A stretch of DNA of 64,000 bases from Utricularia gibba (Eukaryota; Plantae; Magnoliophyta), in NCBI GenBank assembly GCA_002189035.1, contig CM007991.1, positions 4,712,001 to 4,776,000 of the forward strand, read 5' to 3'. Positions 1-45,966 of the stretch are shown piece after piece; within the stretch, counting starts at the first letter, position 1, and every line of letters starts with the position of its first letter. The position numbers and the translations under genes are program-made. The notes under the pieces are model-generated. The model did not search any database and was not told the origin of the DNA. It saw only the letters and a program-made list of their open reading frames with translations.

Positions 1-2294
1 GAGGGTGACATGTTGTTGAGTATAACAGCTTAGTGCCAAGTTTACTCCAAAGAACTCTCCAAAAGTGACTAAGAAACCTTGCATCTCGATCAGAGACAAT
101 AGTTAGGGGCATTCCATGAAGTCTAACAACTTCCCTAGAGAAGAGATCAGCCACATGAGATGCATCATCAGTTTTATGGCAGGGAATAAAATGTGCCATC
201 TTTGAAAACCTGTCCACAACAACGAAAATTGAATCTCTACCCCTTTGGGTACGAGGTAAGCCTAAAACAAAGTCCATAGAAATGTCCACCCATGGTTGGG
301 AAGGAGTAGGGAGTGGAGTATACAAACCATTAGGGGCAGTGGTTGATTTAGCCTTCCTACAAGAGATACATCTAGAACAAATTCTTTCAACATCCCTTCT
401 CATGTGTGGTCAAAAGAAATGTTGGGTGAGAGTATCAAGAGTCTTTTTAACACCAAAATGTCCCATTAGTCCCCCACCATGAGCTTCTCTAACAATAAAA
501 TCACGTATGGAGCAAGAAGGAATGCACAGCCTATCTTTCCCATAAAGAAAACCATCTTTCCTGAAGAATAGTCCAGATGGAGCAAGTTCACATGCCTTAT
601 AAATATCCCCAAAATCGTGATCATGAACATATAAGTCAATGATGGAAGCAAATCCAAGAATTCTTGCATCAAGATTGGCTAAAAAGAGTGTACCTTCGAG
701 ATAAAGCATCAGCAACCACATTCTCCTTACCTTTCTTGTATTTGATCACATATGAAAATGTGTCAATGAATTCCACCCACTTAGCATGTGTTCTATTCAG
801 CTTTCCTTGAGCCTTCAAATGTTTGAGAGACTCATGATCAGTGTGTATCACGAACTCCTTAGGCCACAAGTAGTGCTGCCATGTCTCCAAAGCTCTAACC
901 AACGCAAACAACTCTTTGTCATATGTTGGATAGTTGAGGGTGGCACCATGAAGCTTCTCACTAAAATAAGCAAGTGGACGTCCCTTTTGCATCAACACAG
1001 CACCAATCCCTAAACCTGATGCATCACATTCAATTTCAAAAGTATCAGAAAAATTTGGAAGTGCTAGGAGAGGTGTTGAGCAAAGCTTATTCTTGAGTTG
1101 TTTGAAAGCATGTTCCTGCTCATCTCCCCAATGAAATGCATGATTTTTCTTGATCAACTGGGTGAGGGGTGCTGCTATAGAACTGAAGTCCCTAACAAAC
1201 CGTCTATAGAAACTTGCTAAACCATGAAAACTCCTAACTTCACCCACTGATTTAGGTGTTGGCCATTCTTTAATTGCTCTTACTTTCTCTTCATCCACAG
1301 CTACTCTTGCATCACTTACAACATATCCAAGAAAAGAGACACTATTTGTGCAAAAGACACACTTCTTGATGTTAGCAAACAACTTCTCTTTTCTAAGAGT
1401 ATCTAACACATCTTTCAAATGCCCTAAATGTTCCTCAATACTCTTACTATAGATAAGAATATCATCAAAATAAACAACAACAAATCTACCTATAAAAGGC
1501 CTAAGAACGTGATTCATCAATCTCATAAAGGTGCTAGGAGCATTGGTTAACCCAAAAGGCATAACAACCCACTCATAGAAACCAAACTTAGTTTTAAAAG
1601 CAGTTTTTCACTCATCACCTTCCTTCATTCTAATTTGATGATACCCACTTCTCAAATCAATCTTACTAAAAACACAAGCACCATGCAATTCATCAAGCAT
1701 ATCTTCAAGTCTAGGGATAGGATGTCTATACTTGATTGTGATGTTGTTGATGGCGCGACAATCAGTACACATCCGCCAAGTTCCATCAGACTTTGGAACC
1801 AATAACACTGGTACTGAGCAGGGGCTCATGCTCTAACGCACAAATCCTTTAAACACCAATTCCTCAACTTGTTTTTGTATTTCCTTCGTCTCCTCTGGAT
1901 TGGCTCGGTATGCTGGTCGGTTTGGGAGTTGTGCTCCAGGGACAAGGTCAATTTGATGCTCAATCTCTCTAAGGAGGGGTAAGCCTTGAAGTTCTTCTGG
2001 AAAAACATCTTCATATACCTGTAAGAGAGACACAACACAAGATGGAATGGATGAAGCATGGTTAGGGGAAGTAGGAACTTCATCATTATACATGAATAGA
2101 AAGAATGGTTGCCTAGCATGAAGTAAGTGTCTCTCAATTTCTAAAACTCTTATGTTTCCACTTTCTGTTTTGCGCTCATTTTCATCCTTTTTTCCACTCA
2201 ATTCCTTGCCATCTCTTCTTTTTTCTCCACTTTTTCGCATCTTTTTTTCACTCATTTTCACTCCACTTGTATCTTCTCCCTTAGGAACGACCAC
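1..2294 (-). pseudogene. pol: CRM pol (RT, RNase H, integrase) broken by stops and frameshifts
   Basis: Successive ORFs 1833-2294, 1608-1829, 669-1562 and 410-721 carry consecutive pol motifs ([41 protein letters not shown]); the integrase core reads on the minus strand to position 1. Confidence 0.9.
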
Positions 2295-2347
2295 CTTGTA
2301 CTTTCCATTATCAGTATGAAGGGCTCTAGCATCACTCAGGATTCTGA

Positions 2348-4072
2348 TTATGGAGCAAGTGTGATGGAGCGTCCATTATGATTGAAGGAATACTTGTTCT
2401 TAAAACCATCATGAAATGCTATTCTATCATATTTCCAAGGTCTCCCAAGAAGAATATGGCTTGCATGCATAGGAACAACATCACATAGGACTTTATCTTC
2501 ATATCTCCCAATGGAAAACGTCACAAGCACTTGTTTAGTAACCTTTACCTCACTTCCTTCATTGAACCACTGCAGATTGTAAGGCTTAGGATGCCTCACG
2601 GTTGGTAGTCCCAATTTCTCCACCAAGATGTTGCTGGCAACATTGGTGCAACTACCTCCATCAATAATCAGGCTGCAAACTTTCCCATTAACAAAGCATC
2701 GGGTTTGAAACAAGTTCTCCCTTTGCTCATCATTATCCTTCACTCCAATGTTAAGTGTTCTTCGAGTGACTAAGACTTCTCCAGAAACAGGCAATTCATC
2801 CTCATCACTCAATTCAGCATCGGTCTCCACCAGATCATCCTCATCTTCACTAACCACTTCTCCATTGCCTCTTATCACTATTGCTCGTTTATTTGGACAT
2901 TCAGAAGCAATATGTCCATGCCCCAAACATTTGAAACATTTTATGTTCCTTGTAGTACCCTTTGGAGGTGGTATTCGCTCCCTATGCTTGGAACTTGATG
3001 GGATGTCGAATTTCAAGTTTTCTGTGGATAACTTCCCCTTATTTCTCTCCAGTAACTCTTTGGTGCCTCCAAATCTCGAACCAGGAGGTCTCTTGTTGAA
3101 ATCTTGAGCAAAACTCTTGTTAGAGAGTTGTTTCTCAACTATTGTTGCCATATCAATCATGTCCTCCATCTCAATGTAGTGATGAAGTTCCACAATATTT
3201 GCAATGTCCTTATTCATCCCATGAAGAAACCTAGCCATAGTTGCTTCTCTATCTTCCTGAACATGAGCTCTAATCATTAAAATCTCCATTTCCTGCCAAT
3301 ATTCCTCCACTGGCCTTGAGCCCTGCTTGAGATTTTGCAAACGTTGATAAACATCTCTTTGGTAATGGTTTGGAACAAACCGCCTCCTCATAACTCTTTT
3401 CATCTCAGCCCAAGTGTGAATTGGTTCTTCAGAGTCAATCCTTCTTTTAGCCACCAATTGATCCCACCAAATGACAGCATAGTCACTAAATTCCATGGAG
3501 GCCAATCTGATTTTCTTTTCGTCAGAGAAGGTGTTGCAATCAAAGACATGTTCTACTCTTGTTTCCCATTGGAGATATGCATCTGGATCATTCTTTCCTT
3601 GAAATTGAGGTATCTTCATCTTGATGTTGTTAACATCCTTTCCAATTCTTCCTCCGTCTCTTCTACCTCCCTGATCTCGAAATCTTCTTGTATCCCCATG
3701 CACAAAATCATTTTCACTATGTTCAATGTAGTCATCTTCTTCATCAGTATTCAGGGTTCGATCTCTTCTTCCAACAGTCCTTGCACTTCGTTGATCACTT
3801 ACGTCATGTTCAGTGTTGATGCGTTGATGCATTTGACTGCCTCGACCCCTTCCAGCAGCATAATTATCTTGTCTTCGTGCTCTTGCAACATTTTGCAAAG
3901 AATTTTCGTGTTCATCAAGCCTGACATTTATGTTTTCCAGAATGCGATGCAATCTAGTGAACTCCTGTTGCATAGCTTTCAAAGTGAACCTCTCATCCGG
4001 TGAGTCATCCTTTTCATGCTCACTTCTGGAATTTGACATCCTAAATACAGGAGAAAAGAAAACGAGCAGCAA
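2348..4072 (-). CDS. gag: CRM Gag-protease ORF (574 aa), terminated before RT
   Basis: ORF track; retrotransposon gag core KIPQFQGKNDPDAYLQWE, CCHC knuckle, aspartic protease D(G)G motif. Confidence 0.9.
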   Translation of the reverse strand: MLLVFFSPVFRMSNSRSEHEKDDSPDERFTLKAMQQEFTRLHRILENINVRLDEHENSLQNVARARRQDNYAAGRGRGSQMHQRINTEHDVSDQRSARTVGRRDRTLNTDEEDDYIEHSENDFVHGDTRRFRDQGGRRDGGRIGKDVNNIKMKIPQFQGKNDPDAYLQWETRVEHVFDCNTFSDEKKIRLASMEFSDYAVIWWDQLVAKRRIDSEEPIHTWAEMKRVMRRRFVPNHYQRDVYQRLQNLKQGSRPVEEYWQEMEILMIRAHVQEDREATMARFLHGMNKDIANIVELHHYIEMEDMIDMATIVEKQLSNKSFAQDFNKRPPGSRFGGTKELLERNKGKLSTENLKFDIPSSSKHRERIPPPKGTTRNIKCFKCLGHGHIASECPNKRAIVIRGNGEVVSEDEDDLVETDAELSDEDELPVSGEVLVTRRTLNIGVKDNDEQRENLFQTRCFVNGKVCSLIIDGGSCTNVASNILVEKLGLPTVRHPKPYNLQWFNEGSEVKVTKQVLVTFSIGRYEDKVLCDVVPMHASHILLGRPWKYDRIAFHDGFKNKYSFNHNGRSITLAP

Positions 4073-23390: not shown

Positions 23391-24857
23391 ATGAATGCAG
23401 ATTGCTCTATCAACAAATATAAGGCTAGATTAGTAGCCAAGGGATATAGTCAGATCAAAGGAATAAATTTTCATGAGATTTTTGCACCAGTAACAAGATT
23501 TGACACGATTAAAGTACTTCTTGCCATTTCAGCTGCTCATGGATGGAAAGTGCATCACATGGATGTCAAGACTGCGTTCTTGAATGGTGTGTTGGAGGAG
23601 GTTGTTTTTGTTGAACAACCAAAGGGCTTCGAAGTGTCAGGTCATGAAGACAAGGTATTGAAGCTAAAGAAATCTCTCTATGGGTTGAAGCAAGCTCCTA
23701 CAGCATGGAATGAACGCATGGATAACTTTCTTCAGGGTATTGGTTTCAGAAAAACATATAGTGATTACTCACTATATGTTAAAGGAAAAGAAGATGATCG
23801 TTTATTTATTAGCTTATATGTAGATGATCTTATGATTACCTCAGGTAATGAAAGGAAAATTGAGGAATTCAAAGCTCTGCTCAAAAATGAATTCAAGATA
23901 ACTGACCTTGGAATGATGTCCTACTATCTAGGCATGGAAATTCATCAACTTGAAGGTGTTGGAACATTCATATCTCAGAAAAAGTACTGTAATGAACTTC
24001 TTGAAAGGTTTGGGTTCAAAGATGTCAATCCTTCAAAAACGCCTTTGGATTACAAACAAGTGATTGGAGAGAACAATCAGGGAAGGAATGTGGATGCCAC
24101 TACTTATAGAAGTATGATTGGAAGCCTCATTTATCTCCAGCATACAAGGCCTGACTTGTGTTTTTGTGTAAATGTCTTATCTCGCTTCCTCAACAAACCA
24201 ACAACAACTCACATGGCAGCTGTGAAAAGAGCTTTCAGGTACATAAAATCATCTACTGATTTCGGATTGTTCTATCCCTATGAAGGTGAAAAACCAGTCT
24301 TGAAACTTAGAGCCTACTCAGATAGTGATTATGGTATGGCTGAAGATAGCAAGAATACATCTGGTGCACTCTTCTTCTTAAATAAGAGCCCTGTAGTCTG
24401 GTTTTCGAAGAAACAAAAAGTGGTAGCACAATCAACAGCTGAAGCAGAATACATCTCAGCAGCACATGCTTCGAACTATTGTGTTTGGTTCAGGCAAATG
24501 CTAAACGAACTTGGATTCATACAACAGGAAGCTACACATCTGCTTATGGATAATCGAGCTGCAATCTCCATTGCCAAGGATCCGACGAACTTCAGCAAAG
24601 CCAAACACATAAGAATCAGGTATCATGTCATAAGGAATTACATCAAGGAGAAGAAGATTAAAGTGCAGTATGTTGAGTGTGGGAATCAGCTTGCTGATGG
24701 GCTCACCAAAGGTTTGAACAGAGTTCAGTTTGAGCTAGCAAGAAAGAACATGAATCTCATGACTATGGAAGACTTTCTCAAGTTAGGAGATCTCGGTCTG
24801 GGGGGAGTGTTGGAGATCAGCCTCAATCCAAAGTTTGAAGGTGATTGGAAGAACTAA
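23391..24857 (+). CDS. pol: Copia reverse transcriptase-RNase H ORF (488 aa), open, stop codon inside the 3' LTR
   Basis: [67 protein letters not shown]. Confidence 0.93.
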   Translation: MNADCSINKYKARLVAKGYSQIKGINFHEIFAPVTRFDTIKVLLAISAAHGWKVHHMDVKTAFLNGVLEEVVFVEQPKGFEVSGHEDKVLKLKKSLYGLKQAPTAWNERMDNFLQGIGFRKTYSDYSLYVKGKEDDRLFISLYVDDLMITSGNERKIEEFKALLKNEFKITDLGMMSYYLGMEIHQLEGVGTFISQKKYCNELLERFGFKDVNPSKTPLDYKQVIGENNQGRNVDATTYRSMIGSLIYLQHTRPDLCFCVNVLSRFLNKPTTTHMAAVKRAFRYIKSSTDFGLFYPYEGEKPVLKLRAYSDSDYGMAEDSKNTSGALFFLNKSPVVWFSKKQKVVAQSTAEAEYISAAHASNYCVWFRQMLNELGFIQQEATHLLMDNRAAISIAKDPTNFSKAKHIRIRYHVIRNYIKEKKIKVQYVECGNQLADGLTKGLNRVQFELARKNMNLMTMEDFLKLGDLGLGGVLEISLNPKFEGDWKN

Positions 24858-25804: not shown

Positions 25805-27244
25805 TTATCCATACAGATCACGAAAGTTTGAAGCATGTCAAGAGTCAAAAAAATCTCAATAGAAGACACACAAAATGGGTGGAGTTCATTAATACCTTTC
25901 CTTATGTTATCAAATACAAGAAAGGTAAGGAGAACATTGTTGAAGATGCATTGTCACAAAGGTACACACTTTTAGCTACTCTTGATGTTCAAATTCTTGG
26001 ATTGTCAACGATAAAAGAATTTTACAGTCTTGATCATGATTTTAAAGATATTTATCTTTCATGTGAACTTAAACCTCTTGAAAACTTCCATAGGCAAGAT
26101 GATTTTCTTTTCAAAAAAAATAGATTATGTATTCCTCAATGTTAAATTCGTGAGTTTTTAGTGAAAGAAGCTCATGGTGGTGGTTTAATGGGGCATTTTG
26201 GGGTCACCAAGACGTTAGACATGCTTCAACAACACTTCTATTGGCCACAGATGAGAAAAGATGTGGAAAGAATCTGTGGAAGATGTTTGGTGTGCAAGAG
26301 AGCCAAATCAAAATCAACTTCTCAAGGATTGTACACTCCTCTTCCTAATCCTCTTTACCCTTGGATTGACCTTTCTATGGATTTTGTTTTAGGATTACCA
26401 AAGACTCAAAAGGGAAAGGATTCAATATTTGTAGTGGTGGACAGGTTCTCCAAGATGGCACATTTCATTCCTTGTCACAAGACTGATAATGCTTCTCATA
26501 TTGCGGATTTATTCTTTAGGGAAATTGTTAGGCTTCATGGCATGCCACTTACTATTGTAAGTGATCGTGACACAAAGTTTCTTAGCCACTTTTGGCGCAC
26601 ACATTGGAGTAAGTTGGGAACAAAGTTTCTTTTCTCTACCACTTGTCATCCTCAGACTGATGGACAAACCGAGGTAACAAATCGAACCCTAGCTACCCTA
26701 CTTCGTGCCATCATCAAAAAAAACATTCGAACATGGGAAGATTGCTTACCTCATGTTGAGTTTGTATACAATAGAGCAGTACACTCTTCTACTCGTTGTT
26801 CTCCTTTTGAAATTGCGTATGGTTTTAATCCTCGTGCTCCTATAGACTTGTTGCCCTTGCTATCTGATGAATTTCGTAGTTTTGATGGTGCTAAGAGAGC
26901 AGATGCCATCAGAACACTACATGAGAAGGTTTGAAATCAACTTAAAGCCAAAAACAAGGAGTATGCAACTAAAGAGAATAAACATAGGAAGAAAGTTACT
27001 CTACAACCAGGAGATTGGGTTTGGGTACATTTTCGAAAGGAAAGATTTCCAAGCAAGAGACATTCAAAGCTTTCACCTAGAGGAGATGGACCCTTTCAAG
27101 TCATTGAGAAAATCAATGATAATGCTTATAAGATTGATCTTCTAGGTGAGTTTTTGGTGCACTCCACATTCAATATTGCTGACTTGATTCCTTGTGATGT
27201 AGATGGTGACGATTCAAGGATCAATCTACTAAAAGAAGGGGGGA
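25805..27244 (+). pseudogene. pol: CRM-B RNase H tail and integrase
   Basis: ORFs 25792-26145, 26161-26934 and 26867-27145: [48 protein letters not shown]. Confidence 0.9.
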
Positions 27245-31413: not shown

Positions 31414-33548
31414 GTGATTAGGAAATGCTGAGTCGGTGTGAATGAGACCGCAAACTATGAGGGGCATGTTGGCAACTAGTATCTGTCAAATTTGTATGCC
31501 ACCTAAGCCCGAGCACTTTTTTTATTAGATGCGAGTGATCACGTCGCTGGTTGCATGTTTAAAACTTACAGCGTGTTGCAAGAAACCGTATAAATAACGG
31601 AATTCAACACAAAAACATTTTAGGGTGTCATCAATCCTAATACTACTCTTGCCCAGGCATGATTAACTTCGCAAATCTAATGGTATTCGATGCATAAGTG
31701 CTGGTTTCATTGCACTTGAATGGTGCTGCGCAACCAAGTAACCCATGCATCCTGCTCCTCAGTCCGTGAAGCATAACTTTCTAACCGCTTTGATCCATGT
31801 GACGCACCACACATCGTTTAGAAGCTCTTTGCAAACCCGACGCAATATGGTTGGTTTGAGAGGCGTCCATCAATCGTACAAATTTAGAAACATAGTTTTA
31901 AAGATGCTCTGAATCGCAGGACTGCGTCGTGATGAAGACGTAGAAGTTGTGATTAGGAAATGCTGAGTCGGTGTGAATGAGACAGCGAAGTACGAGGGTC
32001 AAGTTGGTGACTAGATGTCGGTGATCACGTCGCTGGTTGCACGTTCACCACTGACAGCGTGTTGCTGGAAACCATAAAAATAGGGGAATTCAACACGAGA
32101 AATTTCCAGTGCGTCATCCATGCATGCTTAACTTTGCAGTTCTGATGGTAATGGATGAATAAGTGCTGGTTGCATTGAACTTGAGTGGTGCTGCACGACC
32201 AAGTAACCCATGCATTGTGCTTCTGGGTCGATGAAGCATAACTTTCAAACCGCTTTGATCCATTTGACGCATACTACATCAATTTAAAGCTCGATGCAAG
32301 CCCGACGCAAAATGGTTGGTTTGAGAAGCGCCCAACAATCATATAAATTTAGAAGCGTAGTTCTAACCGTGCGCTAAATCGCAAGAGTGCATCGTGATGA
32401 AGACGTAGAAATTGTGATTAGGAAGTGCGTACTCATTGTGAATGAGACGGCGAAGTACGAGGGGCACGTTGGCGACTAGTATCTGCCAAATTTGTATGCC
32501 ACAAGCACAAGGACTTTTTACTAGATGTCGGTGATCACGTCGCTAGTTGCACGTTCACAACTGACAGCGTGTTGCAGGAAACCATATAAATAACGGAATT
32601 CAACACGAGAACCTTCTAGGGTGTCATCCATCCTAATTCTACTCTCGCCCAGGAATGATTAACCTCGCAAATCTAATGGTATTCGATGCATAATTGCAGG
32701 TTTCATTGCACTTGTGTGGTGCTGTGCCACCAAGTAACCCATGCATCCTGCTCCTCAGTCCGTGAAGCATAACATTCAAACAGCTTTCCTCCATGTGACG
32801 CGTAGCACATCGTTTGGAAGCTCTATGCAAGCCGGATGCAAAATGGTTGGTTTTACAAGCGCCCAATAGTCGTATAAATTTAGAAACGTAGTTCTAACGG
32901 TGCCCTGAATCGCATGAGTGCGTCTTGATGAAGACGTAGAAATTGGGAATAGCAAATCCTAAGTCGGTGTCAATGAGACAGCAAAGTATGCGGGCCACGT
33001 TGGTTACTAGGACCTCCCAAATTGGTATACCACATAAACCTGAGGAATTTTTATAGATGTTGTTGATCACGTCGCTGGTTGCACATTCACAACTGACAGC
33101 GTGTTGCTGGAAACCGTATAAATAAGGGAATTAAACATGAGAACTTTTCAAGGTGTCATGCAGTCTTATACTACTCTCAGTCATAGCTTGCTTAACTTTG
33201 CAATTCTTATGGTATTCGATGCATAAGTGCTGGTTTCATCGCACTTGAGTTGTGTTGCACAACCAAGTAACCCATGCATCGTGATCATCAGTCCGTGAAG
33301 CATAACTTTCAAACCACTTTCATCCATGTGACGCACAGCACATCGTTTTGAAGCTCTTTGCAAGCCCAACGCAAACTGGTTGGTTTGAGGGGCGCCCATC
33401 AATCGTACAAATTTAGAAGCGTAGTTTTAACGGTGCACTGAATCGCAGGAGTGCATCGTGATGAACACGCAGAAGTTGTGATTAGGAAATGCTGAGTCAG
33501 TGTGAATGAAACCGCGAAATACGAGGGGCACATTGGCGACTACGATCT
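31414..33548 (+). repeat. Tandem satellite-like array, ~533-bp monomer, 4 units plus a 70-bp partial
   Basis: Anchor gtgattaggaaatgctgagtc (or variant) at 31414, 31949, 32414, 32945 and 33478, giving spacings 535, 465, 531 and 533. Confidence 0.93.
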
Positions 33549-38100: not shown

Positions 38101-41100
38101 TTAGCTACAAGTTCTCGTGCATACAAACTTGATTTTAACATATGAAAAATGATCGAAAAATGAAAGCAAATGAGAAAATAAAATGTGGAAATTGATTGTA
38201 AGACTTCCAAGACAAGACTTTGTAACTCTCCAAAAGTATGGTATTCAGGTCCATATCTAGAAGTAGAAGCTTTGAATTTTAATTTATGTACTTATATTAA
38301 ATCTTATATCCAAATGTTTTCAAATTATATTTAAATATTTTAAGATAATATTCAAATCATCATTTAATCCAACCTTTTGGGATTAAATCTTAATCCAGAC
38401 AGTTCAATTTTTATCCCTCCCCCTCCCCACCAAAATCATCTTTATTTGTCTTCAATTTAAATTAACATAATTTCAAAAAATCATCTAGTCCAAATTGACA
38501 CAAAAGATTTACAAATTATTCAAAATTGTTGGGAAAACTAAACGAAAAACATTCAAAACAACAAAAAAAAGTTATTAAAAACCAAAAGCAATTGACCCAA
38601 CAATGTGACTTAGGAACCGCTTTCTTTTGTTTCTGTTTTGTTGATGTTGTTGTTGTTGTTTTTTTTTTTTTTTACCTCTCTAGATGTTGAAATGGACACC
38701 GTAGATCGTAGATGTCTATAGCACAGGAATTCACAACTCACTAGCCATGTGCTGTGTAATCTACAACATTAATGTAAGAAGGTTAAAATTTATTAATTCC
38801 ATAGATAACAAATGCAAAAATATCTAATCCCAATATAAACAAAAAATTCATGCAAATTGCAACATTTACTTGAAATTCTGAAAAAAAAATTAGGCATACA
38901 ATAAACGTGTTCGTCAAATCTGTAAAATCGATTATGCTGTTATCAAATTAAACAACCTTGCAATATTTACCTGACCAATCCAAACAAATAATTGAATAAA
39001 AAAAAATATGATGAAAATCTCCAAAAAAATTCCCAAAATTGTAAAAAAAAATCTGAAAATCTTCATTTGGGTAGATTAACGAACAAAAACCATTTATTAT
39101 CAACATGGAGAATAAATCTAACCTACTTTTGTGACATATTTTCTAGTTTCAAGGGAGTTAACGATACCTGAAATCTTGAATCCATCACATTAGAGGAATG
39201 GAAGAAGTGGAAAAACTAGAAACACTATTTATGAGTATTTTTGAATAAAAAATGATGAAAAAGTCCCAAATTTAATATTAAATTATTTTATTAAACAGAA
39301 ATCCTAACTCATGCTTTATTTATATAAACTCAACTTTATTTCAGCAAATTTGATATTTTTCAAAAATGTATTCATAATACCAATCCAATACGAATTCCCA
39401 CAAAAGAATTCAATAAAATATTCATAATGTTGTCAATACCAATATACTTCAAATATAATGAATAATGTTTGGTTTAATTCGATACTGAACTACCCATTGT
39501 TGTTTCCATTTCCTTATTCTATCTCAATGCTCATTCCTCTCTAGTGCATTTTTACATGGCCTAGTCACACATTTTTGTGGCATGTTCCTTGGACATAAAT
39601 AATCTCAGGCAAGCACATACACACAAAACAAATTTACACACCCATCAACTACCCATTGTTGTTGTAATCCATTTCCCCTACTATGACCCTAACAAAAATG
39701 TCTTGATACCATGGTGTCAAGTCCAAAATTTATATCCCACTGAACTCAAACTTTGATGTCATGTTCCTAAGAAATGACCATAAGACTTTATTGGCCTATT
39801 AAGTCATAAAGGAACTAGCTATAAGTGTAGAGTTCCAAACTGAAAATGATAAGGTGAGTTAAGTACATCATAGGGAACGAGGGACTTTGCTTTTTCTTCG
39901 AAACATGATGTATGATCAAGTTAAAGAACAGCAAATTTATTAGCATAATACACAGAAAAAGCATGATCCAGGTGTCATGCTTAGTCTTCCCTACACAATA
40001 TCCTACTTGGCCACTATGTAGAACCAACAGCAGCCCTAAACCAACACCAACTCAAAGATCCTTCTAGGACCATGAATGGAAAGCACTAAAATAATATCAA
40101 AAGGAACATGTAAGACAAGCACTAAACCATTTAAAATGCAACACCATTAAGAATTAACGACATAATGTAATAAGCATTAATCACATAATTGAGTCTTTAC
40201 TTTGATTTGAAAATCTCAGAAATCAAGGTCAAAAAGTCCTTTTGGATCTATCTTATGAAATCAGCAACCAGTGCAACACCCTTCACCAACTTCACATTGA
40301 TGCAACACCTCTATCGTTTTCCCTTTCATTTCTTCAATCTCAAATTCTATGGTGAATATTATTCTATGAGAAGTTCCCTCAAAGCATAATCAACATAAAT
40401 AAGCCAGCATCCAGAACTCCCCCAAAAGTCTTCTATTTCAAACAATCACATTGCATCTCAGACTGATAAATGCAGCACAACAGTCACGTAAACCAAATCA
40501 TATTTGGAAGCCTTTACCTTATCTAAAATTTCCAAATAAACTTCGTTTGAAATGCTGACGAGCAATATTTTATTCAATAAAAAGGAATCACCAACATCTG
40601 AATGCCCAGTGGAGAGTTATGAATTATAGAAGTGGATTGAGAAAAACAGTTCTTAACGTTTGGTAGTTTTGAGAGGTTTTAAGTGAAAATTCATAATTTT
40701 CTGTTTCCATCTCTAAAGCAAGAAATTGTTTTTTAAACATGATCAACACTCATCATGTTAGAAGTTGATTGAAAAAATTAGTTTGAAAAAAATCAAAACT
40801 TTCTGTTTATATTTGTAAAATAATAAACTATGTTTGAAATATAATCAACACTCAAGGTTGAACCTATTGTGTTTATGAAGAATCATTATTTAAACGGAAT
40901 GAATTATTCCAAAAAATACATTGACCAGTGTATTTTGTAGAATAATTCATTTCGTCCAAATGAACATTTTCAAAATTAAGTATAATTTCATTAATTTTTG
41001 TGTTTAATATCAAAATATTATTTTAAATATTATAAGAATCTAATTTGTATTATTTAATTTTTATATTTGTTACGATTATAAAAGTTGAATTTGTAATCTT

Positions 41101-41624
41101 TCAGTTAATCACATAATCGAAAGAATAATATAATAATTATGTAATTAAATGATATATATTATATGTTGATCTAAAATCCAATAATTACGTGGAATAAGTT
41201 TTTCAAATATTATTAATTTGTATTTGAAATCGTGTATGAAAAATGTTTTTACAAGAATATTTATTTTTATGCTTATATTAAAACTACATCACTCTTACGC
41301 ATTGCAAATTATTCAGAAGAGTATACAGGATGTCACTTGATGTTCATAAACAGCATCAAGAGAGGTTTAGTCGTCAAGTAATGATAATAAACAGCACCCA
41401 GAAGGGTTCTGGACGTTGATTAAAGATAGTAAATATCACCCAGGGTTATGGACGTCGTTTAGTGATAATAAACAATGTTTAACAACTTGTATCCACTATC
41501 AAATGATAATCAGAAGTATTCAATCTAGTTTTTTATTAATTTTTTTAAATAAACTATAAACTAAAATTTTGTTCAAATCCATATTAGATAGTGGAGAAAT
41601 AAGGTTTGATGAAGTTATAGTCGA

Positions 41625-41800
41625 ATTGCAAAAGCTTTACTTGCATAATCCAAACTGCCATATTTTACATAAATGTCGTGAATCAAATTACAAAATGGAA
41701 GATTAATCTCTATATACTAATTAATTACAAATTGATGTTCATCCCAAATGAAAGATTTATAGACTCTACCCATGAGTGCAATGCACTCAGGATTGTAATT
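41625..41800 (-). pseudogene. PLS-class PPR fragment in the left arm (antisense mirror of 42211-42390)
   Basis: ITILSALHSWVESINLSFGM-(frameshift)-EHQFVIN*YIEINLPFCNLIHDIYVKYGSLDYAS. Confidence 0.72.
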
Positions 41801-41828
41801 TGATTTTCATTATGCTATCACATAAAAT

Positions 41829-42020
41829 GTGACAATCAAATTTATTATTAATCAGCATACAGAAACTAATCTCTCACTTTGCAATTCGATTCTTGCATTT
41901 TATGCAAAATATGGTAGCTTGAACTATCTTATGAAAGTTTTTGAAGAGATGATTAAAAATGATGTAAAATGCGGTATCTTGAACTATGAAAGTACAATCG
42001 TAAGTGCATCATACTCATGA
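41829..42020 (+). pseudogene. PLS-class PPR gene fragment (best-preserved copy)
   Basis: NLSLCNSILAFYAKYGSLNYLMKVFEEMIKND matches the PLS PPR consensus N(A/S)LI.MYAKCG.L..A..VF.EM..(K/R)D. Confidence 0.8.
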
Positions 42021-42210
42021 TGTAAAATATGAAAATCCAATTTACTATTAATGAGCATATAGAGATTAATCTTCCACTATATTAATATTATTTCAATAAA
42101 AATTATAAGGAAATCTAGGAATTGAATTACAAAGTGAGAGATAATTTCTATATACTGATTAATAACAAATTTTACTCTCACATTTTATGTAATAGCATAA
42201 TAAAAATCGA

Positions 42211-42390
42211 ATTACAATCGTAAGTGTATTGCACTCATGGTTAGAGTCTATGGATCTTTCATCTGGGATGAACATCAACTTATTATTAATTAGCATATAG
42301 AGATTAATCTTTCATTTTGTAATTTGATTCTTGAAATTTATATAAAATGTGGCAGTTTAGATTATGCAAGTAAAGTTTTTGCAATTCGAC
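42211..42390 (+). pseudogene. PLS-class PPR fragment in the right arm
   Basis: ITIVSVLHSWLESMDLSSGM-(frameshift)-EHQLIIN*HIEINLSFCNLILEIYIKCGSLDYASKVF. Confidence 0.75.
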
Positions 42391-43781
42391 TATAACTTTA
42401 TCAAGACTTATTTCTCCACTATTCAATATGGATCTAAGCAAAATTTTAGTTTATCATTTATTTAAAAAATTAATAAAAAACTAGATTGAATGCTTCTGAT
42501 TATCATTAGAAAATGGTTACAAGTTGTTAAATATTAATTATTATCACTAAACGATGTTCAAATAAGTGTGCACACTATTAATAATCATTAAATGGCATCC
42601 AGAACCCTTTGGGTTCTAGAACCCTTCTTTAATCAATGTCCAGAACCCTTCTTGACGTTGTTTACCATCTTTAATCGGCATCTAGAACCCTTCTGGGCGA
42701 TGTTTCTTATCATTAATTGATGCCCCAGACCTCTCTGGATGCTGTTTATGAGCATCAAGCGACGTCCATGTATATTTTTCTACATACTTTGCAATTTGGA
42801 AGAGTGATACAGATTTAATATAAGCATGAAAAAAAATATTCTTTTGAAAACTTTTTTCATACACATGATTCCAAATACAAATTAATAATATTTGAAAAAC
42901 TTATTTCATGTAATTACTGGATTGTAGATCTAACGTATATTATATATCATTTAATTACGTAATTATTATATTATTCTTTCGATTATGTGATTAATCGAAA
43001 GATTACAAATTCAACTTTTATGATTGTCACACATATGAAAATTCAATAATGCAAATTAGATATCTTATAATATTTAAAACAATATTTTGATGTAAACAAA
43101 AAAATAATGAAATTATACTTAATTTTGAAAATGGTCATTTAAAAGAAATGAATTATTCTATAAAATGTCAAGTTTATGCAAATGATTTTTTGAGGATAGC
43201 CATCTCTCAAATTTCGGAGATGAGAGATGGTCATGTTTCAAATTCACCCAGAAGAATGAGGAACCCACAAAAGGAGAGATTCATTGAACCATTTTATTTA
43301 TTGTAGCAGGTCTTGCGAATGGTATTGAGAATGGGTTGTTGGTACCAAATTCAAAATCTACTTCTTTAATAGTAGTATAGGGAAAAGGGATGGGATGATA
43401 CCGAGCATGTTTACTATCTCTTCTCGAGAAACTGAAGATGTTGAAACCTTACTAATCCACTCAAATCTATGGATTTATTTTTTTAATACGAATTTTAAGG
43501 ATGAAAACGGCCATCATTAATGTCAAAATAACTGAAGGGCTACAGTCCATGTTTATTAAACTTAAGATCCACCCGTGCTTGGAGCATATCGATGGAATGG
43601 ACGAAATACGAACAGTTAGCATAATATGGTCTGAGATCTTAGGAAATAGAGATGGAAAGAGTTAGAACTCTAAAAACATGTCTCACTTCGTAAAAAATAT
43701 TTTTTTTTGCCTTACATAAGAATTCAAAAAAGATTGCTTCATTCATGGCATTTCATCTTTTGGGATGAGCAAGGTTGTCCA

Positions 43782-43897
43782 TATTTCACGAAGTATGTGT
43801 CTAGATAGTCGAAAATGTCGATAATTAGCTCTGGGTCTTCGGATCAAACACGATGTGCAGTTGCACTCTTCCGGGGTGGGAATGCATGCTACCAGAT
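43782..43897 (-). pseudogene. rps14: Plastid-derived (NUPT) rps14 fragment
   Basis: RPRANYRHFRLSRHILREI versus plastid RPRANYRDFGLSGHILREM; nucleotide blocks gactatc..gacacatacttcgtgaaat and cccaccccggaagagtgca. Confidence 0.85.
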
Positions 43898-43969
43898 AGG
43901 CTTGAGTCTGATAACTCAATTTCCTTGTAGGAGTCCACAATCACTAACCGAGATGAACTCTGATTTGCT

Positions 43970-44045
43970 GAATTTTACTTTTTCTTAGATTCAGGAACGA
44001 ATTCAATTCTGAGGAATTTTTCATTCACATTGTCCCTCCTAAAAA
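43970..44045 (+). pseudogene. ycf2: NUPT fragment of the ycf2 5' end
   Basis: ttcttagattcaggaacgaattcaattctgaggaatttttcattcacatt versus recalled ycf2 ttcttagattcatggacccaattcaattcagtgggatctttcattcacatt. Confidence 0.75.
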
Positions 44046-44054
44046 GAATACTCC

Positions 44055-44094
44055 AGAATAACACTCAATTTTAGCACGAATAGTTTGTAGGGGG
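44055..44094 (-). pseudogene. rps3: NUPT fragment of the rps3 3' end
   Basis: cccctacaaactattcgtgctaaaattga encodes PLQTIRAKI, the conserved Rps3 C-terminal motif. Confidence 0.7.
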
Positions 44095-45966
44095 GATATA
44101 CTAGAACCATCTATCATTTCTTCGGATAGGATAGAAGAAGATTCTGGAAACACTTATTCGAAATCTCAACGTAGAACACCTTTAAAATGAATTCACCCTT
44201 TCCTGTTACATTTGCATTCAGATGTCAACTTATCAATCAACCATAAACCTTCTTTTCTTTCTTTTTCGCTGAAAAAGTAGCATATATATTTTTGAATTGC
44301 TCCCCTCGCTCCTTTTTTCCCCACAATGTAGGGATTTTTACATAAAATATCATCTTCGTAACCTTGGGGATCTAGTTGAGATCTTTTTCAAATAGAAAGA
44401 TATTAAACATAGTCATTAATGACGGTTGTTCGCTGTACTGACAAGAAATTTGAAAAAAAATAATATATTAACAATTAAACTCAAATATGTTTATTTGAGC
44501 CCTATGACTATAAAGCCTGCTACTTTTGACCGGGTCTTGTATGTTGTAATAAATGATTGAATATTCATTTAACTTATTTAACACAAATGAATTTCGAAAA
44601 TTATGAATAAATTTTTTATATAATTTTAATACATAAAAAAATCAATTTATAATAACATGTAAAATGATATTTTTGTTCTTTTATATATCGTATAAAAAAA
44701 ATATAATGTAAGTCAATTAAAAACGTATATTAAGAAAAAAATATCATTTGTAGTTCTAATAAAATGAAAAACAAGTTTATTTTACATAATTATTAATTTC
44801 CGATTTTCAAAATAAAAAATGAAAATGTAGAACTAATTGGTCATCACATCCTTTTTCTCTGGTCAATGTAGTGTCGGAATCCCGCCAATCCGCCCTGTCC
44901 CACCGATTCCTTGTCTTTATCTTTAGTAAGTGTTTAATTGGATTAATATGGAGAGTTTTGGTATGAAACTAAATATTGGCTATATGTTTGATTAGTTGGT
45001 CAAATTATGCATAAATAAAAAATAATTTATTGAAATAATGCAACAAAGAATAAAAATAATCTTAAAGGAGACTTGAATTTTTTTTTTCTATACCAAATAA
45101 AAGTAAGCTCATGAACTTTGCCTTACTTGAGATACATCATTTCATTACTTATGGCAACTCCCTTCATATGAAATGGATTCAAAGTTTTCATGTTGTTGAT
45201 TCCAAAGTATCGCGCTTCTTCCCTTATGCTATTTTGAAGAATCTTTTCCATTCTTTGGTTATATATGATTATAATAATATGTTGAAATTTAATCATATGG
45301 GTTGAGTAAAGACATATGAAATTCAAGTACACAAGAAACATGAATTATATTAAAGAAGATTAAGTCCAACCGATTACTAGTGATCCACAATCTTGTATAT
45401 ATTTAACTATTTCACTTTCATTTTCCAATATGAGATTATTTGTTCTAATAATCAAAGTCAAGTCAAATAGTCTTTTAATCCTATTAAGACTTGTTTTTTT
45501 GTGTGATTGTAGGTATTACTTGTGTCATAGGTTGATTTAACTGTTGTCGCTTAAGTCCAATCCATCTTCTTGTTTTTTTTTAATTGGAAACTCCGTTAAA
45601 CATGAAACTCATCTTGGCCACCCTAGTCGTGCCAAGATAAAAGAGTTCAACAAACTTTACAATATTACATCTAGGGTTCCTTGAACAATGAGATATCTTA
45701 CACAAAGAGATATTGATAATACACATCTTCCAAATAATTGACATTTCACGTTCCTGATCCGATCCGCAAGGACATTGATTGGGAATTTTTTGAATTCTTC
45801 TTTTGATTCTATTTTTGTTCTCTCTTTATGATTCAAAAAAGACAAAAAAACTTTTGGTCCACTAACACTAAAGCCTTTACGGATATTGTCAGGAAAATGG
45901 ATATTTTAGGGCAGAGGACATAAAATCCTCATGTCACTAGTTCAAACATGGTTCCTGACATAGGTA

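What the first reader, a model, noticed from the sequence alone, without database searches (positions are those of the whole stretch)
40932..43166. 2.2-kb foldback whose core is an amplified, alternately oriented PPR-gene module: candidate hairpin/siRNA (proto-MIRNA) locus against PLS-class PPR genes
Seen: two ~1-kb arms pair as an inverted repeat. Their inner parts and the spacer hold at least five degenerate copies of one segment: minus 41625-41800, plus ~41840-41970, plus partial ~41993-42085, minus partial ~42100-42175, plus 42211-42390. The copies translate to an L-motif to S-motif junction of a PLS PPR protein (VTIVSVL...DL..GM.HQF(V/I)IN..IE.NLSLCN.I..YAK(C/Y)GSL(D/N)YA.KVFEEM). From memory this resembles the Arabidopsis At2g37310-type PPR, unverified. 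Established: inverted duplication of target-gene sequence is a documented origin of plant MIRNA and siRNA loci (e.g. miR161 from PPR genes), and Mutator/Foldback elements capture gene fragments. Inference: a transcript through this structure would fold into long dsRNA containing PPR-derived sequence and could regulate PPR genes in trans. Alternatively it is an undescribed Foldback family built on a captured PPR module.
Basis: partly seen in the sequence, partly recalled or inferred. Interest (0 to 1): 0.85.

Follow-up and report, generated by a model that had tools for sequence, protein, structure and literature searches.

The report
Decayed foldback repeat carrying PPR fragments
A 2.2-kb stretch of plant DNA that can fold back on itself is a real, old, decayed member of a small repeat family that once picked up a piece of a PPR gene; it could in principle yield small RNAs, but nothing here shows that it does or that it regulates anything.

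Summary
Window 40932-43166 is a long inverted repeat. Its arms are 87% identical over 933 sites, and the RNA fold gives -1144 kcal/mol against -400 for shuffles (z = -67). The inner arms and apex hold five degenerate copies of one about 200-nt module in the order - + + - +. A profile of 154 orthologues hits only this element in the 64-kb window (best E 1.4e-11), always at profile positions 259-326. One copy is 83% identical in DNA to the Genlisea aurea orthologue.

About 700 nt of each arm is not PPR. It is AT-rich DNA with sharp termini and 41-42-nt subterminal tandem repeats that differ in number between the arms. A third copy of the terminus abuts the left end. Public DNA runs hold diverged paralogous copies with the same architecture.

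The best reading is a decayed foldback-type non-autonomous repeat with a captured gene fragment. It is not a direct inverted duplication of the gene. No target-site duplication was found, no RNA run was listed and there is no Rfam match. The siRNA or proto-MIRNA role remains untested and unsupported.

The parts
40932..41900 (.). Left arm of the foldback
   Evidence: Pairs with 43166-42111. 87.2% identity over 933 sites up to 41868.
42111..43166 (.). Right arm of the foldback. It is about 85 nt longer than the left arm because it has two more subterminal repeat units.
41901..42110 (.). Apex (loop) of about 210 nt, holding the 3' part of M2, a 26-nt local duplicate (41962-41987 of 41902-41927) and M3
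40932..40999 (+). Left terminus, 91% complementary to 43099-43166. The motif TAGAATAATTCATTTC lies at 40938-40953.
43099..43166 (-). Right terminus, with the same motif at 43145-43160
40873..40923 (-). Third, solitary copy of the terminus. It lies head-to-head with the left end, 2 nt apart if the termini run to 40923 and 40926.
   Evidence: blastn 40873-40917 against 43123-43166 at 80%. Inverted pair I13, 40881-40923 / 40926-40968. Motif hit at 40896-40911.
41332..41474 (.). Subterminal 41-42-nt tandem repeats of the left arm, about 3.4 units, each holding the small hairpin motif CCAGAAGGGTTCTGG
   Evidence: Families D5 and D6; motif search. TRF at its thresholds did not report them.
42584..42748 (.). 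Subterminal 41-42-nt tandem repeats of the right arm, about 4 units
   Evidence: Families D3 and D7; the 85-nt gap in the arm alignment.
41618..41814 (-). PPR module M1 (type A), matching orthologue HMM positions 259-319, with stops and a frameshift
   Evidence: HMM E 1e-4 and 0.046; tblastn.
41826..42017 (+). PPR module M2 (type B; its 5' part carries a roughly 23-nt deletion shared with M3 and M4). It contains a 63-codon open frame and is the copy closest to the donor gene.
   Evidence: HMM E 1.4e-11 at positions 285-326. Pfam PPR_3 E 1.9e-4. phmmer gives 912 hits. 83% DNA identity over 59 nt to the Genlisea orthologue.
41990..42076 (+). PPR module M3 (partial, type B), in the loop
   Evidence: D12, D2 and D18; blastn 42029-42076 against 42268-42314 at 87.5%, E 8.6e-10; alignment.
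42111..42192 (-). PPR module M4 (partial, type B), the arm partner of the 5' part of M2
   Evidence: I15, D11 and D17; arm alignment; module alignment.
42196..42392 (+). PPR module M5 (type A), the arm partner of M1, matching HMM positions 259-319
   Evidence: HMM E 1.3e-8 and 1.2e-3; tblastn.

Best explanation
The locus is an old, decayed and probably immobile member of a low-copy foldback-type (very long TIR) non-autonomous DNA repeat family. It lies in TE-rich, probably pericentromeric DNA of a plant that is most likely a member of Lentibulariaceae.

Proposed history (inferred):
1. Before the family spread, an ancestor acquired about 220 nt of the intronless At2g37310-type PLS PPR gene, covering the end of one PPR motif and most of the next (residues about 233-305).
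2. The fragment was duplicated and inverted at least twice, giving the order - + + - +.
3. The two arms have since diverged by K2P 0.14, roughly 5-10 million years.
4. The PPR pieces have lost their frame and drifted strongly from G/C to A/T.

Shown here: the structure, the donor gene family, the decay and the existence of paralogues.

Inferred: the transposon nature, and capture rather than direct gene duplication. A read-through transcript would fold into imperfect long dsRNA and be diced into heterogeneous siRNAs. Those would mainly reinforce silencing of the family itself rather than regulate the donor PPR gene.
For: Structure.

Donor:
- The orthologue HMM hits only this element in the window, collinearly at positions 259-326.
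- The best-ranked proteins are At2g37310 orthologues.
- DNA-level homology to the Genlisea orthologue has E 2e-12.
- Five residues that are rare among 154 orthologues are shared with Genlisea.

Capture rather than whole-gene inverted duplication:
- PPR similarity stops sharply at both module ends although the donor is about 2 kb of continuous coding sequence. No other six-frame fragment of the arms hits.

TE-like features:
- Defined termini with a shared motif.
- Subterminal tandem repeats that differ in number between the arms.
- A third solitary terminus next to the left end.
- Paralogues in DNA runs. One 1625-nt contig carries a terminus and an M2-like module about 1 kb apart, and its match stops about 9 nt from the end of the IR. 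Another contig spans the M1/M2 junction at 13% divergence.

Decay:
- Stops and frameshifts.
- G/C-to-A/T changes outnumber the reverse 3-4 fold, and module GC is 22-30% against 46% in the gene.

Context: LTR-retrotransposon ORFs and neighbouring plastid-derived DNA.
Against: - No target-site duplication of 3-11 bp at any plausible pair of boundaries.
- The outermost 6 nt of the right end do not match the other two termini.
- No transposase or autonomous partner was found in the window.
- Copy number is low, and the contig depth of the element is not above that of its flanks.
- The paralogues could only be seen as summary rows, not as sequences, so segmental duplication cannot be ruled out.
- Expression and small RNAs were not testable.
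Confidence: 0.6

Rival explanations
1. Functional hairpin-siRNA or proto-MIRNA locus. The foldback is transcribed and diced, and its PPR-derived small RNAs down-regulate the At2g37310-type gene, or other PLS PPR genes, in trans.
For: - The fold is very stable, with perfect helices of 36-55 bp, two of them inside the PPR part (41606-41650/42360-42404 and 41680-41715/42295-42330).
- Both orientations of the gene fragment are present.
- Even against the Genlisea gene, 13 of 791 21-mers have 3 or fewer mismatches.
- Inverted duplication of target genes is an accepted route to young MIRNA and siRNA loci (PMC1790633).
Against: - No RNA run was listed and there is no Rfam family match.
- The 21-mers closest to the donor lie in the apex copies M2 and M3, which are unpaired or poorly paired in the main fold. 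The stably paired copies M1 and M5 are only 67-68% identical to the Genlisea gene by blastn and 58-60% in the global alignment.
- Arm identity in the PPR part (87%) is no higher than in non-PPR parts (89-91%).
- Divergence between accessions equals that of the flanks.
- 70% of each arm is not gene-derived.
- The setting is heterochromatic, with no evident promoter.
Confidence: 0.1
2. Not a transposon. This is a local palindromic segmental duplication in heterochromatin, for example by fold-back repair or template switching. It happened to include a PPR pseudogene fragment, and later segmental duplications produced the paralogues.
For: No TSD. Low copy number, with depth no higher than the flanks. 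No autonomous partner in the window. The region is a patchwork of organellar and TE debris.
Against: - One paralogous contig loses similarity within about 9 nt of the IR end.
- A solitary third terminus exists.
- Subterminal tandem repeats with small internal hairpins, and variable unit numbers between arms and in the paralogue, are typical of transposon ends.
Confidence: 0.25

Closest known systems
Plant foldback transposons (FARE and 'Hairpin' elements of Arabidopsis, SoFT of Solanaceae, Tnr8 of rice)
   Same: - Non-coding elements of 1-2 kb made almost entirely of two long inverted arms.
- Modular arms with subterminal tandem repeats.
- Conserved termini and low to moderate copy number.

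The FB-like families are described as structurally similar but of independent origins in PMC3169594. Details of FARE are from my memory of Windsor & Waddell 2000, which is not held in the library.
   Different: - No 9-bp (or any) TSD was found.
- No sequence relation to those families was or could be tested.
- This element carries amplified host-gene fragments at the inner ends of the arms.
- The transposase superfamily is unknown.
Pack-MULEs and other transduplicating DNA transposons
   Same: A short fragment of a host gene sits between, or inside, long TIRs and is copied along with the element. The fragment is decayed and non-coding. Extra TIR copies next to an end are known for MULEs (PMC3310237).
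   Different: - In Pack-MULEs the TIRs are typically a few hundred bp and the captured DNA lies in a non-repeated centre. Here the captured piece is itself part of the inverted arms and has been amplified.
- There is no MULE-type terminus or 9-11-bp TSD.
Endogenous long inverted-repeat hp-siRNA loci and young MIRNA genes born by inverted duplication of target genes (IR71/IR2039, MIR161/MIR163; Allen et al. 2004; PMC1790633)
   Same: A long self-complementary locus containing both orientations of a protein-coding gene fragment. Its arms are imperfect, as expected for the drift stage described in PMC1790633.
   Different: - In those loci the arms are the gene sequence and small RNAs are documented. 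Here only about a quarter of each arm is gene-derived and no RNA evidence exists.
- miR161-type loci relate to P-class PPR genes, whereas this donor is a PLS-class gene.
Mu killer (an inverted duplication of a transposon that silences its family; cited in PMC1790633 as ref. 26)
   Same: An inverted-repeat derivative of a DNA transposon whose hairpin transcript would silence related copies. This is the most plausible activity if the locus is transcribed.
   Different: Mu killer is a recent, nearly perfect duplication with demonstrated hairpin RNA and genetic effect. Here the arms are 13% diverged and nothing has been shown.

Membership tests
PPR gene-derived sequence, At2g37310 orthogroup (PLS class) | Significant, position-specific similarity to that orthogroup rather than to PPR repeats in general | tested here: met
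   An HMM of 154 orthologues hits only the element, with E from 1.4e-11 to 0.046 at collinear positions 259-326. The top 16 of 269 proteins are orthogroup members matched at the same residues. The names come from NCBI annotations.
PPR gene-derived sequence, At2g37310 orthogroup (PLS class) | Nucleotide-level homology to an orthologue's gene | tested here: met
   41869-41927 against the Genlisea aurea gene: 83% over 59 nt, E 2e-12. M5 68% over 129 nt and M1 67% over 140 nt.
Class II (TIR) transposon, foldback type | Terminal inverted repeats with defined ends | tested here: met
   68-nt termini are 91% complementary and the arms pair throughout.
Class II (TIR) transposon, foldback type | Target-site duplication flanking the element | tested here: not met
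   No direct repeat of 3-11 bp at any boundary pair that also gives terminal complementarity. With about 13% arm divergence a decayed TSD cannot be excluded.
Class II (TIR) transposon, foldback type | Multiple copies in different genomic contexts that end at the same termini | tested here: inconclusive
   Diverged paralogous contigs are present in DNA runs. One of them has a terminus-to-module spacing like the window's arm, and its match ends about 9 nt from the IR end. The contig sequences could not be inspected and the number of copies is unknown.
Class II (TIR) transposon, foldback type | Subterminal repeated motifs (transposase-binding type) | tested here: met
   41-42-nt tandem units at 41332-41474 and 42584-42748, with different unit numbers in the two arms. 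Binding itself is not testable here.
Class II (TIR) transposon, foldback type | A related autonomous element encoding a transposase | not testable with these tools
   None in the window, which holds only LTR-retrotransposon ORFs. The host genome was not searchable.
hAT superfamily | 8-bp TSD and 5'-YARNG termini (consensus recalled from memory) | tested here: inconclusive
   Two of three termini can be read as CAGTG / CAATG (40926 and 40923). The right end does not fit, and there is no 8-bp TSD.
Hairpin siRNA locus / proto-MIRNA | Stable long foldback of a single-strand transcript | tested here: met
   MFE -1143.6 kcal/mol, z = -67.
Hairpin siRNA locus / proto-MIRNA | Transcription and small RNAs mapping to the arms | not testable with these tools
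   No RNA run was listed for the stretch. Small-RNA reads are shorter than the index words.
Hairpin siRNA locus / proto-MIRNA | Near-perfect complementarity of products to a target mRNA | tested here: inconclusive
   The host gene is unavailable. Against the Genlisea orthologue the best 21-mers have 2-3 mismatches and lie only in the apex copies; the longest exact match is 13 nt.
Known RNA families (Rfam 15, including MIR families) | Covariance-model match | tested here: not met
   No match at E <= 1 in 40800-43300.

The most novel reading that the evidence does not exclude
A transposon-borne, amplified fragment of a PLS-class organellar PPR gene has been exapted as a hairpin small-RNA locus. 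It would tune the host's single-copy At2g37310-type gene, in a plant whose 24-nt siRNA pathway is reported to be weakened (if the host is Utricularia gibba, PMC8333044). That would be a route to MIRNA birth by TE capture rather than by direct gene duplication, and it would aim at a PPR class not known to be under small-RNA control.
Probability: 0.06. Interest if true: 0.7.

Novelty: new member of a known kind. Interest (0 to 1): 0.3.

Why it matters
The locus is a clean worked example of a host-gene fragment that ends up inside, and is amplified within, the arms of a foldback repeat. The donor gene was identified to orthogroup and probable lineage. Such loci are the raw material from which hairpin siRNA and young MIRNA genes are thought to arise, so a catalogue of them in a small, TE-poor genome is useful. 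By itself this copy looks like neutral debris: old, decayed, heterochromatic, and evolving at the rate of its flanks. It does not open a new question unless small RNAs from it are shown to act on the donor gene.

Tried and rejected
1. A possible extra PPR piece on the + strand at 41563-41628 (residues about 200-220 of the orthologues) appeared as weak tblastn alignments. It was rejected because the orthologue HMM gives no hit there at E <= 10.
2. TSD search over 30 x 35 boundary pairs and lengths 3-11 found only A/T-rich chance matches without terminal complementarity.
3. Finding the host's own donor gene failed. Three homologue searches gave many orthologues, but the closest to the Genlisea protein are ordinary Lamiales at 72% or less.
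4. Exact-protein look-ups of a window ORF in the element and of a retrotransposon ORF found nothing on record.
5. An exact 26-mer shared by both arms has no match in JGI metagenome contigs.
6. The search for earlier scan findings by sequence, and a second one by words, returned nothing.
7. RNA runs: none was listed.
8. TRF did not report the 42-nt repeats because they are too diverged. They rest on the repeat finder and the arm alignment.
9. The FARE paper could not be read.
Full report
**1. The observation**

Window 40932-43166 is a genuine long inverted repeat. The repeat finder reports a chain of inverted pairs that together cover both arms:
- 68 nt at the very ends, 91% complementary;
- 130 nt at 91%;
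- 339 nt at 87% in the inner part.

Self-blastn joins them into one alignment, 40932-41900 against 43166-42111. A global alignment gives 87.2% identity over 933 ungapped sites up to 41868, with 78 transitions, 41 transversions and one 85-nt gap.

Folded as one RNA strand, the 2235 nt reach -1143.6 kcal/mol, against -399.9 +/- 11.1 for dinucleotide shuffles (z = -67). 876 of 972 pairs are arm-to-arm, and the uninterrupted helices are 55, 45, 45, 44 and 36 bp. Within the 64-kb window the element occurs once, apart from a 45-nt terminal fragment.

**2. The PPR modules**

| Module | Coordinates | Strand | Note |
|---|---|---|---|
| M1 | 41618-41814 | - | full module |
| M2 | 41826-42017 | + | closest to the donor |
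| M3 | about 41990-42076 | + | partial |
| M4 | 42111-42192 | - | partial |
| M5 | 42196-42392 | + | full module |

M1/M5 and M2/M4 are arm partners. M3 and the 3' part of M2 lie in the roughly 210-nt apex.

Generic PPR evidence:
- The 63-codon open frame of M2 matches Pfam PPR_3 at E 1.9e-4, below the gathering score.
- In an exhaustive phmmer search of 1.84 billion representatives, M2 gets 912 hits at E <= 1e-3, in proteins matched at several stretches each.

Evidence for the specific donor:
- The best single-stretch matches belong to proteins whose orthologues NCBI names 'At2g37310'.
- The 16 best of 269 proteins compared are members of that orthogroup, always matched at residues about 235-305.
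- I built an HMM from 154 orthologues and searched all 3394 stop-to-stop six-frame fragments of the window. The only hits below E = 1 are five fragments of the element, with E 1.4e-11, 1.3e-8, 1e-4, 1.2e-3 and 0.046, collinear on profile positions 259-326.

**3. Which lineage donated it**

The best overall matches are Lamiales orthologues, with some Ericales among them. Among the 154 orthologues, five residues that are rare (2-8.5%) are shared between module copies and the Genlisea aurea protein. One example is the ESMDL string, found in no other of the 435 proteins fetched.

At DNA level, similarity to the Genlisea gene is:
- M2: 83% over 59 nt (E 2e-12);
- M5: 68% over 129 nt;
- M1: 67% over 140 nt.

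The run holding most of the element is labelled 'plant metagenome'. My own evidence fits Lentibulariaceae but does not prove the species.

**4. Decay**

All copies carry stops or frameshifts except the 63-codon stretch of M2. Relative to the Genlisea gene, G/C-to-A/T changes outnumber the reverse 3-4 fold. Module GC is 22-30% against 46% in the gene. I infer that this is the pattern expected of long-methylated repeats.

The copies fall into two types:
- Type A: M1 and M5, the full module.
- Type B: M2, M3 and M4, which share a roughly 23-nt deletion.

One capture was therefore followed by at least two rounds of duplication or inversion. The arms differ by K2P 0.142. That is about 5-10 million years at 1.3e-8 to 7e-9 substitutions per site per year; the rates are assumed and the estimate is rough.

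**5. What the rest of the arms are**

Only about 200-260 nt of each roughly 970-nt arm is PPR-derived. PPR similarity stops abruptly at both module ends, although the donor is about 2 kb of continuous coding sequence. This argues against a simple inverted duplication of the gene.

The remaining DNA is 26% GC. Its features are:
- well-conserved termini sharing TAGAATAATTCATTTC;
- 41-42-nt subterminal tandem repeats, each with a small hairpin motif, about 3.4 units on the left and two more on the right;
- a third, solitary copy of the terminus at 40873-40923, head-to-head with the left end.

**6. Copies elsewhere**

Contigs of four public DNA runs were laid on 39400-44700.
- Runs X1, X3 and X5 hold pieces identical to the window.
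- Run X2 holds the same locus at about 1.4% divergence (9 differences in 628 nt over 41852-42479). That is no less than its flanks, at 1.7-2.9%, so there is no sign of constraint.

Several contigs are clearly paralogous:
- A 1625-nt contig of X1 carries a terminus-like piece (10 differences and 2 gaps in 116 nt) and an M2-like piece (23 differences in 126 nt) about 1.03 kb apart. The orientation is that of the window's left arm, and the match stops about 9 nt from the end of the inverted repeat.
- A contig of X5 spans the M1/M2 junction at 13% divergence.
- Contigs of X2 cover 42176-42596 at 12% divergence, or join parts of the element differently.

The PPR module and its head-to-head junction therefore belong to a small repeat family and predate its spread. 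Contig depth over the element is not above that of the flanks, so copy number is low.

**7. What was not found**

- No target-site duplication.
- No transposase in the window, which holds LTR-retrotransposon gag, RT, RNase H and integrase ORFs.
- No Rfam family.
- No RNA run listed.
- No match of an arm 26-mer in JGI metagenome contigs.

The superfamily is unresolved. Two of the three termini can be read as CAGTG / CAATG, which resembles the hAT consensus as I recall it. The right end does not fit, so this is only a lead.

**8. Can it target the donor?**

The host's gene could not be obtained. Against the Genlisea orthologue:
- the longest exact match is 13 nt;
- 13 of 791 21-mers have 3 or fewer mismatches;
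- all but two of those (42242-42243, in M5) lie in M2 and M3, at or near the apex, where pairing in the main fold is weak or absent.

The stably paired M1/M5 duplexes are much more diverged from the gene. Targeting is thus unlikely but not excluded.

**9. Verdict**

The best explanation (confidence 0.6) is a decayed foldback-type non-autonomous repeat that captured and amplified a fragment of the At2g37310-type PPR gene. If transcribed, it would give heterogeneous siRNAs that chiefly act on its own family.

Rivals:
- a non-transposon palindromic segmental duplication (0.25);
- a functional hairpin-siRNA or proto-MIRNA locus acting on the PPR gene (0.1).

In kind it is close to plant foldback elements and to Pack-MULE-type transduplication. 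It also resembles the inverted-duplication stage of MIRNA birth described in PMC1790633, but the evidence that defines that class is missing. I rate it a new member of a known kind, of modest interest.

Noticed in passing
window 31599-31717 (-): A single complete 5S rRNA gene match (Rfam RF00001, 47.2 bits, E 1.1e-6) inside TE-rich DNA. I did not check whether it is part of an array.
   Followed up: no
window 669-4072 (-), 23391-24857 (+), 26161-26934 (+): LTR-retrotransposon coding remnants. A Ty3-type gag/protease ORF and an RT/RNase H ORF lie at 669-4072. A copia-type RT (RVT_2, E 3e-75) lies at 23391-24857. An integrase lies at 26161-26934. The window is TE-rich and probably pericentromeric.
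   Followed up: partly
window 43294-44178: Contig depth in DNA runs jumps 10-90 fold (for example 1696-1810 in X2 against 20-90 in the flanks), in short blocks right after the foldback. This fits plastid-derived inserts whose words are also covered by the plastome, and agrees with the earlier notes on a plastid-derived patchwork there.
   Followed up: partly
window 40686-40752 and 40788-40854: Two 67-nt direct repeats, 76% alike and 102 nt apart, lie just left of the solitary terminus copy. Their origin is unknown.
   Followed up: no
window 41187 -> 43177 (runs X1 and X2): A contig in two runs joins left-arm sequence ending at 41187 to the right flank at 43177, with 16 other letters between (ATGAAGATGGTCATTT or ATGAAGATGATCATTT). 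It may be a deletion derivative, another family member next to similar flank DNA, or an assembly artefact of the repeat.
   Followed up: no
window 42270 -> 41845 (runs X2 and X3): A contig 'goes back 426' with GAAGTGCATCAGATTG between the two sides. This indicates a family member, or an allele, with a different order of PPR modules.
   Followed up: no
L001 (Genlisea aurea KE527653.1): The Genlisea At2g37310 orthologue is annotated as an 875-aa protein with C-terminal RING-finger Pfam hits. This is probably a gene-model fusion of the PPR gene with its neighbour.
   Followed up: no
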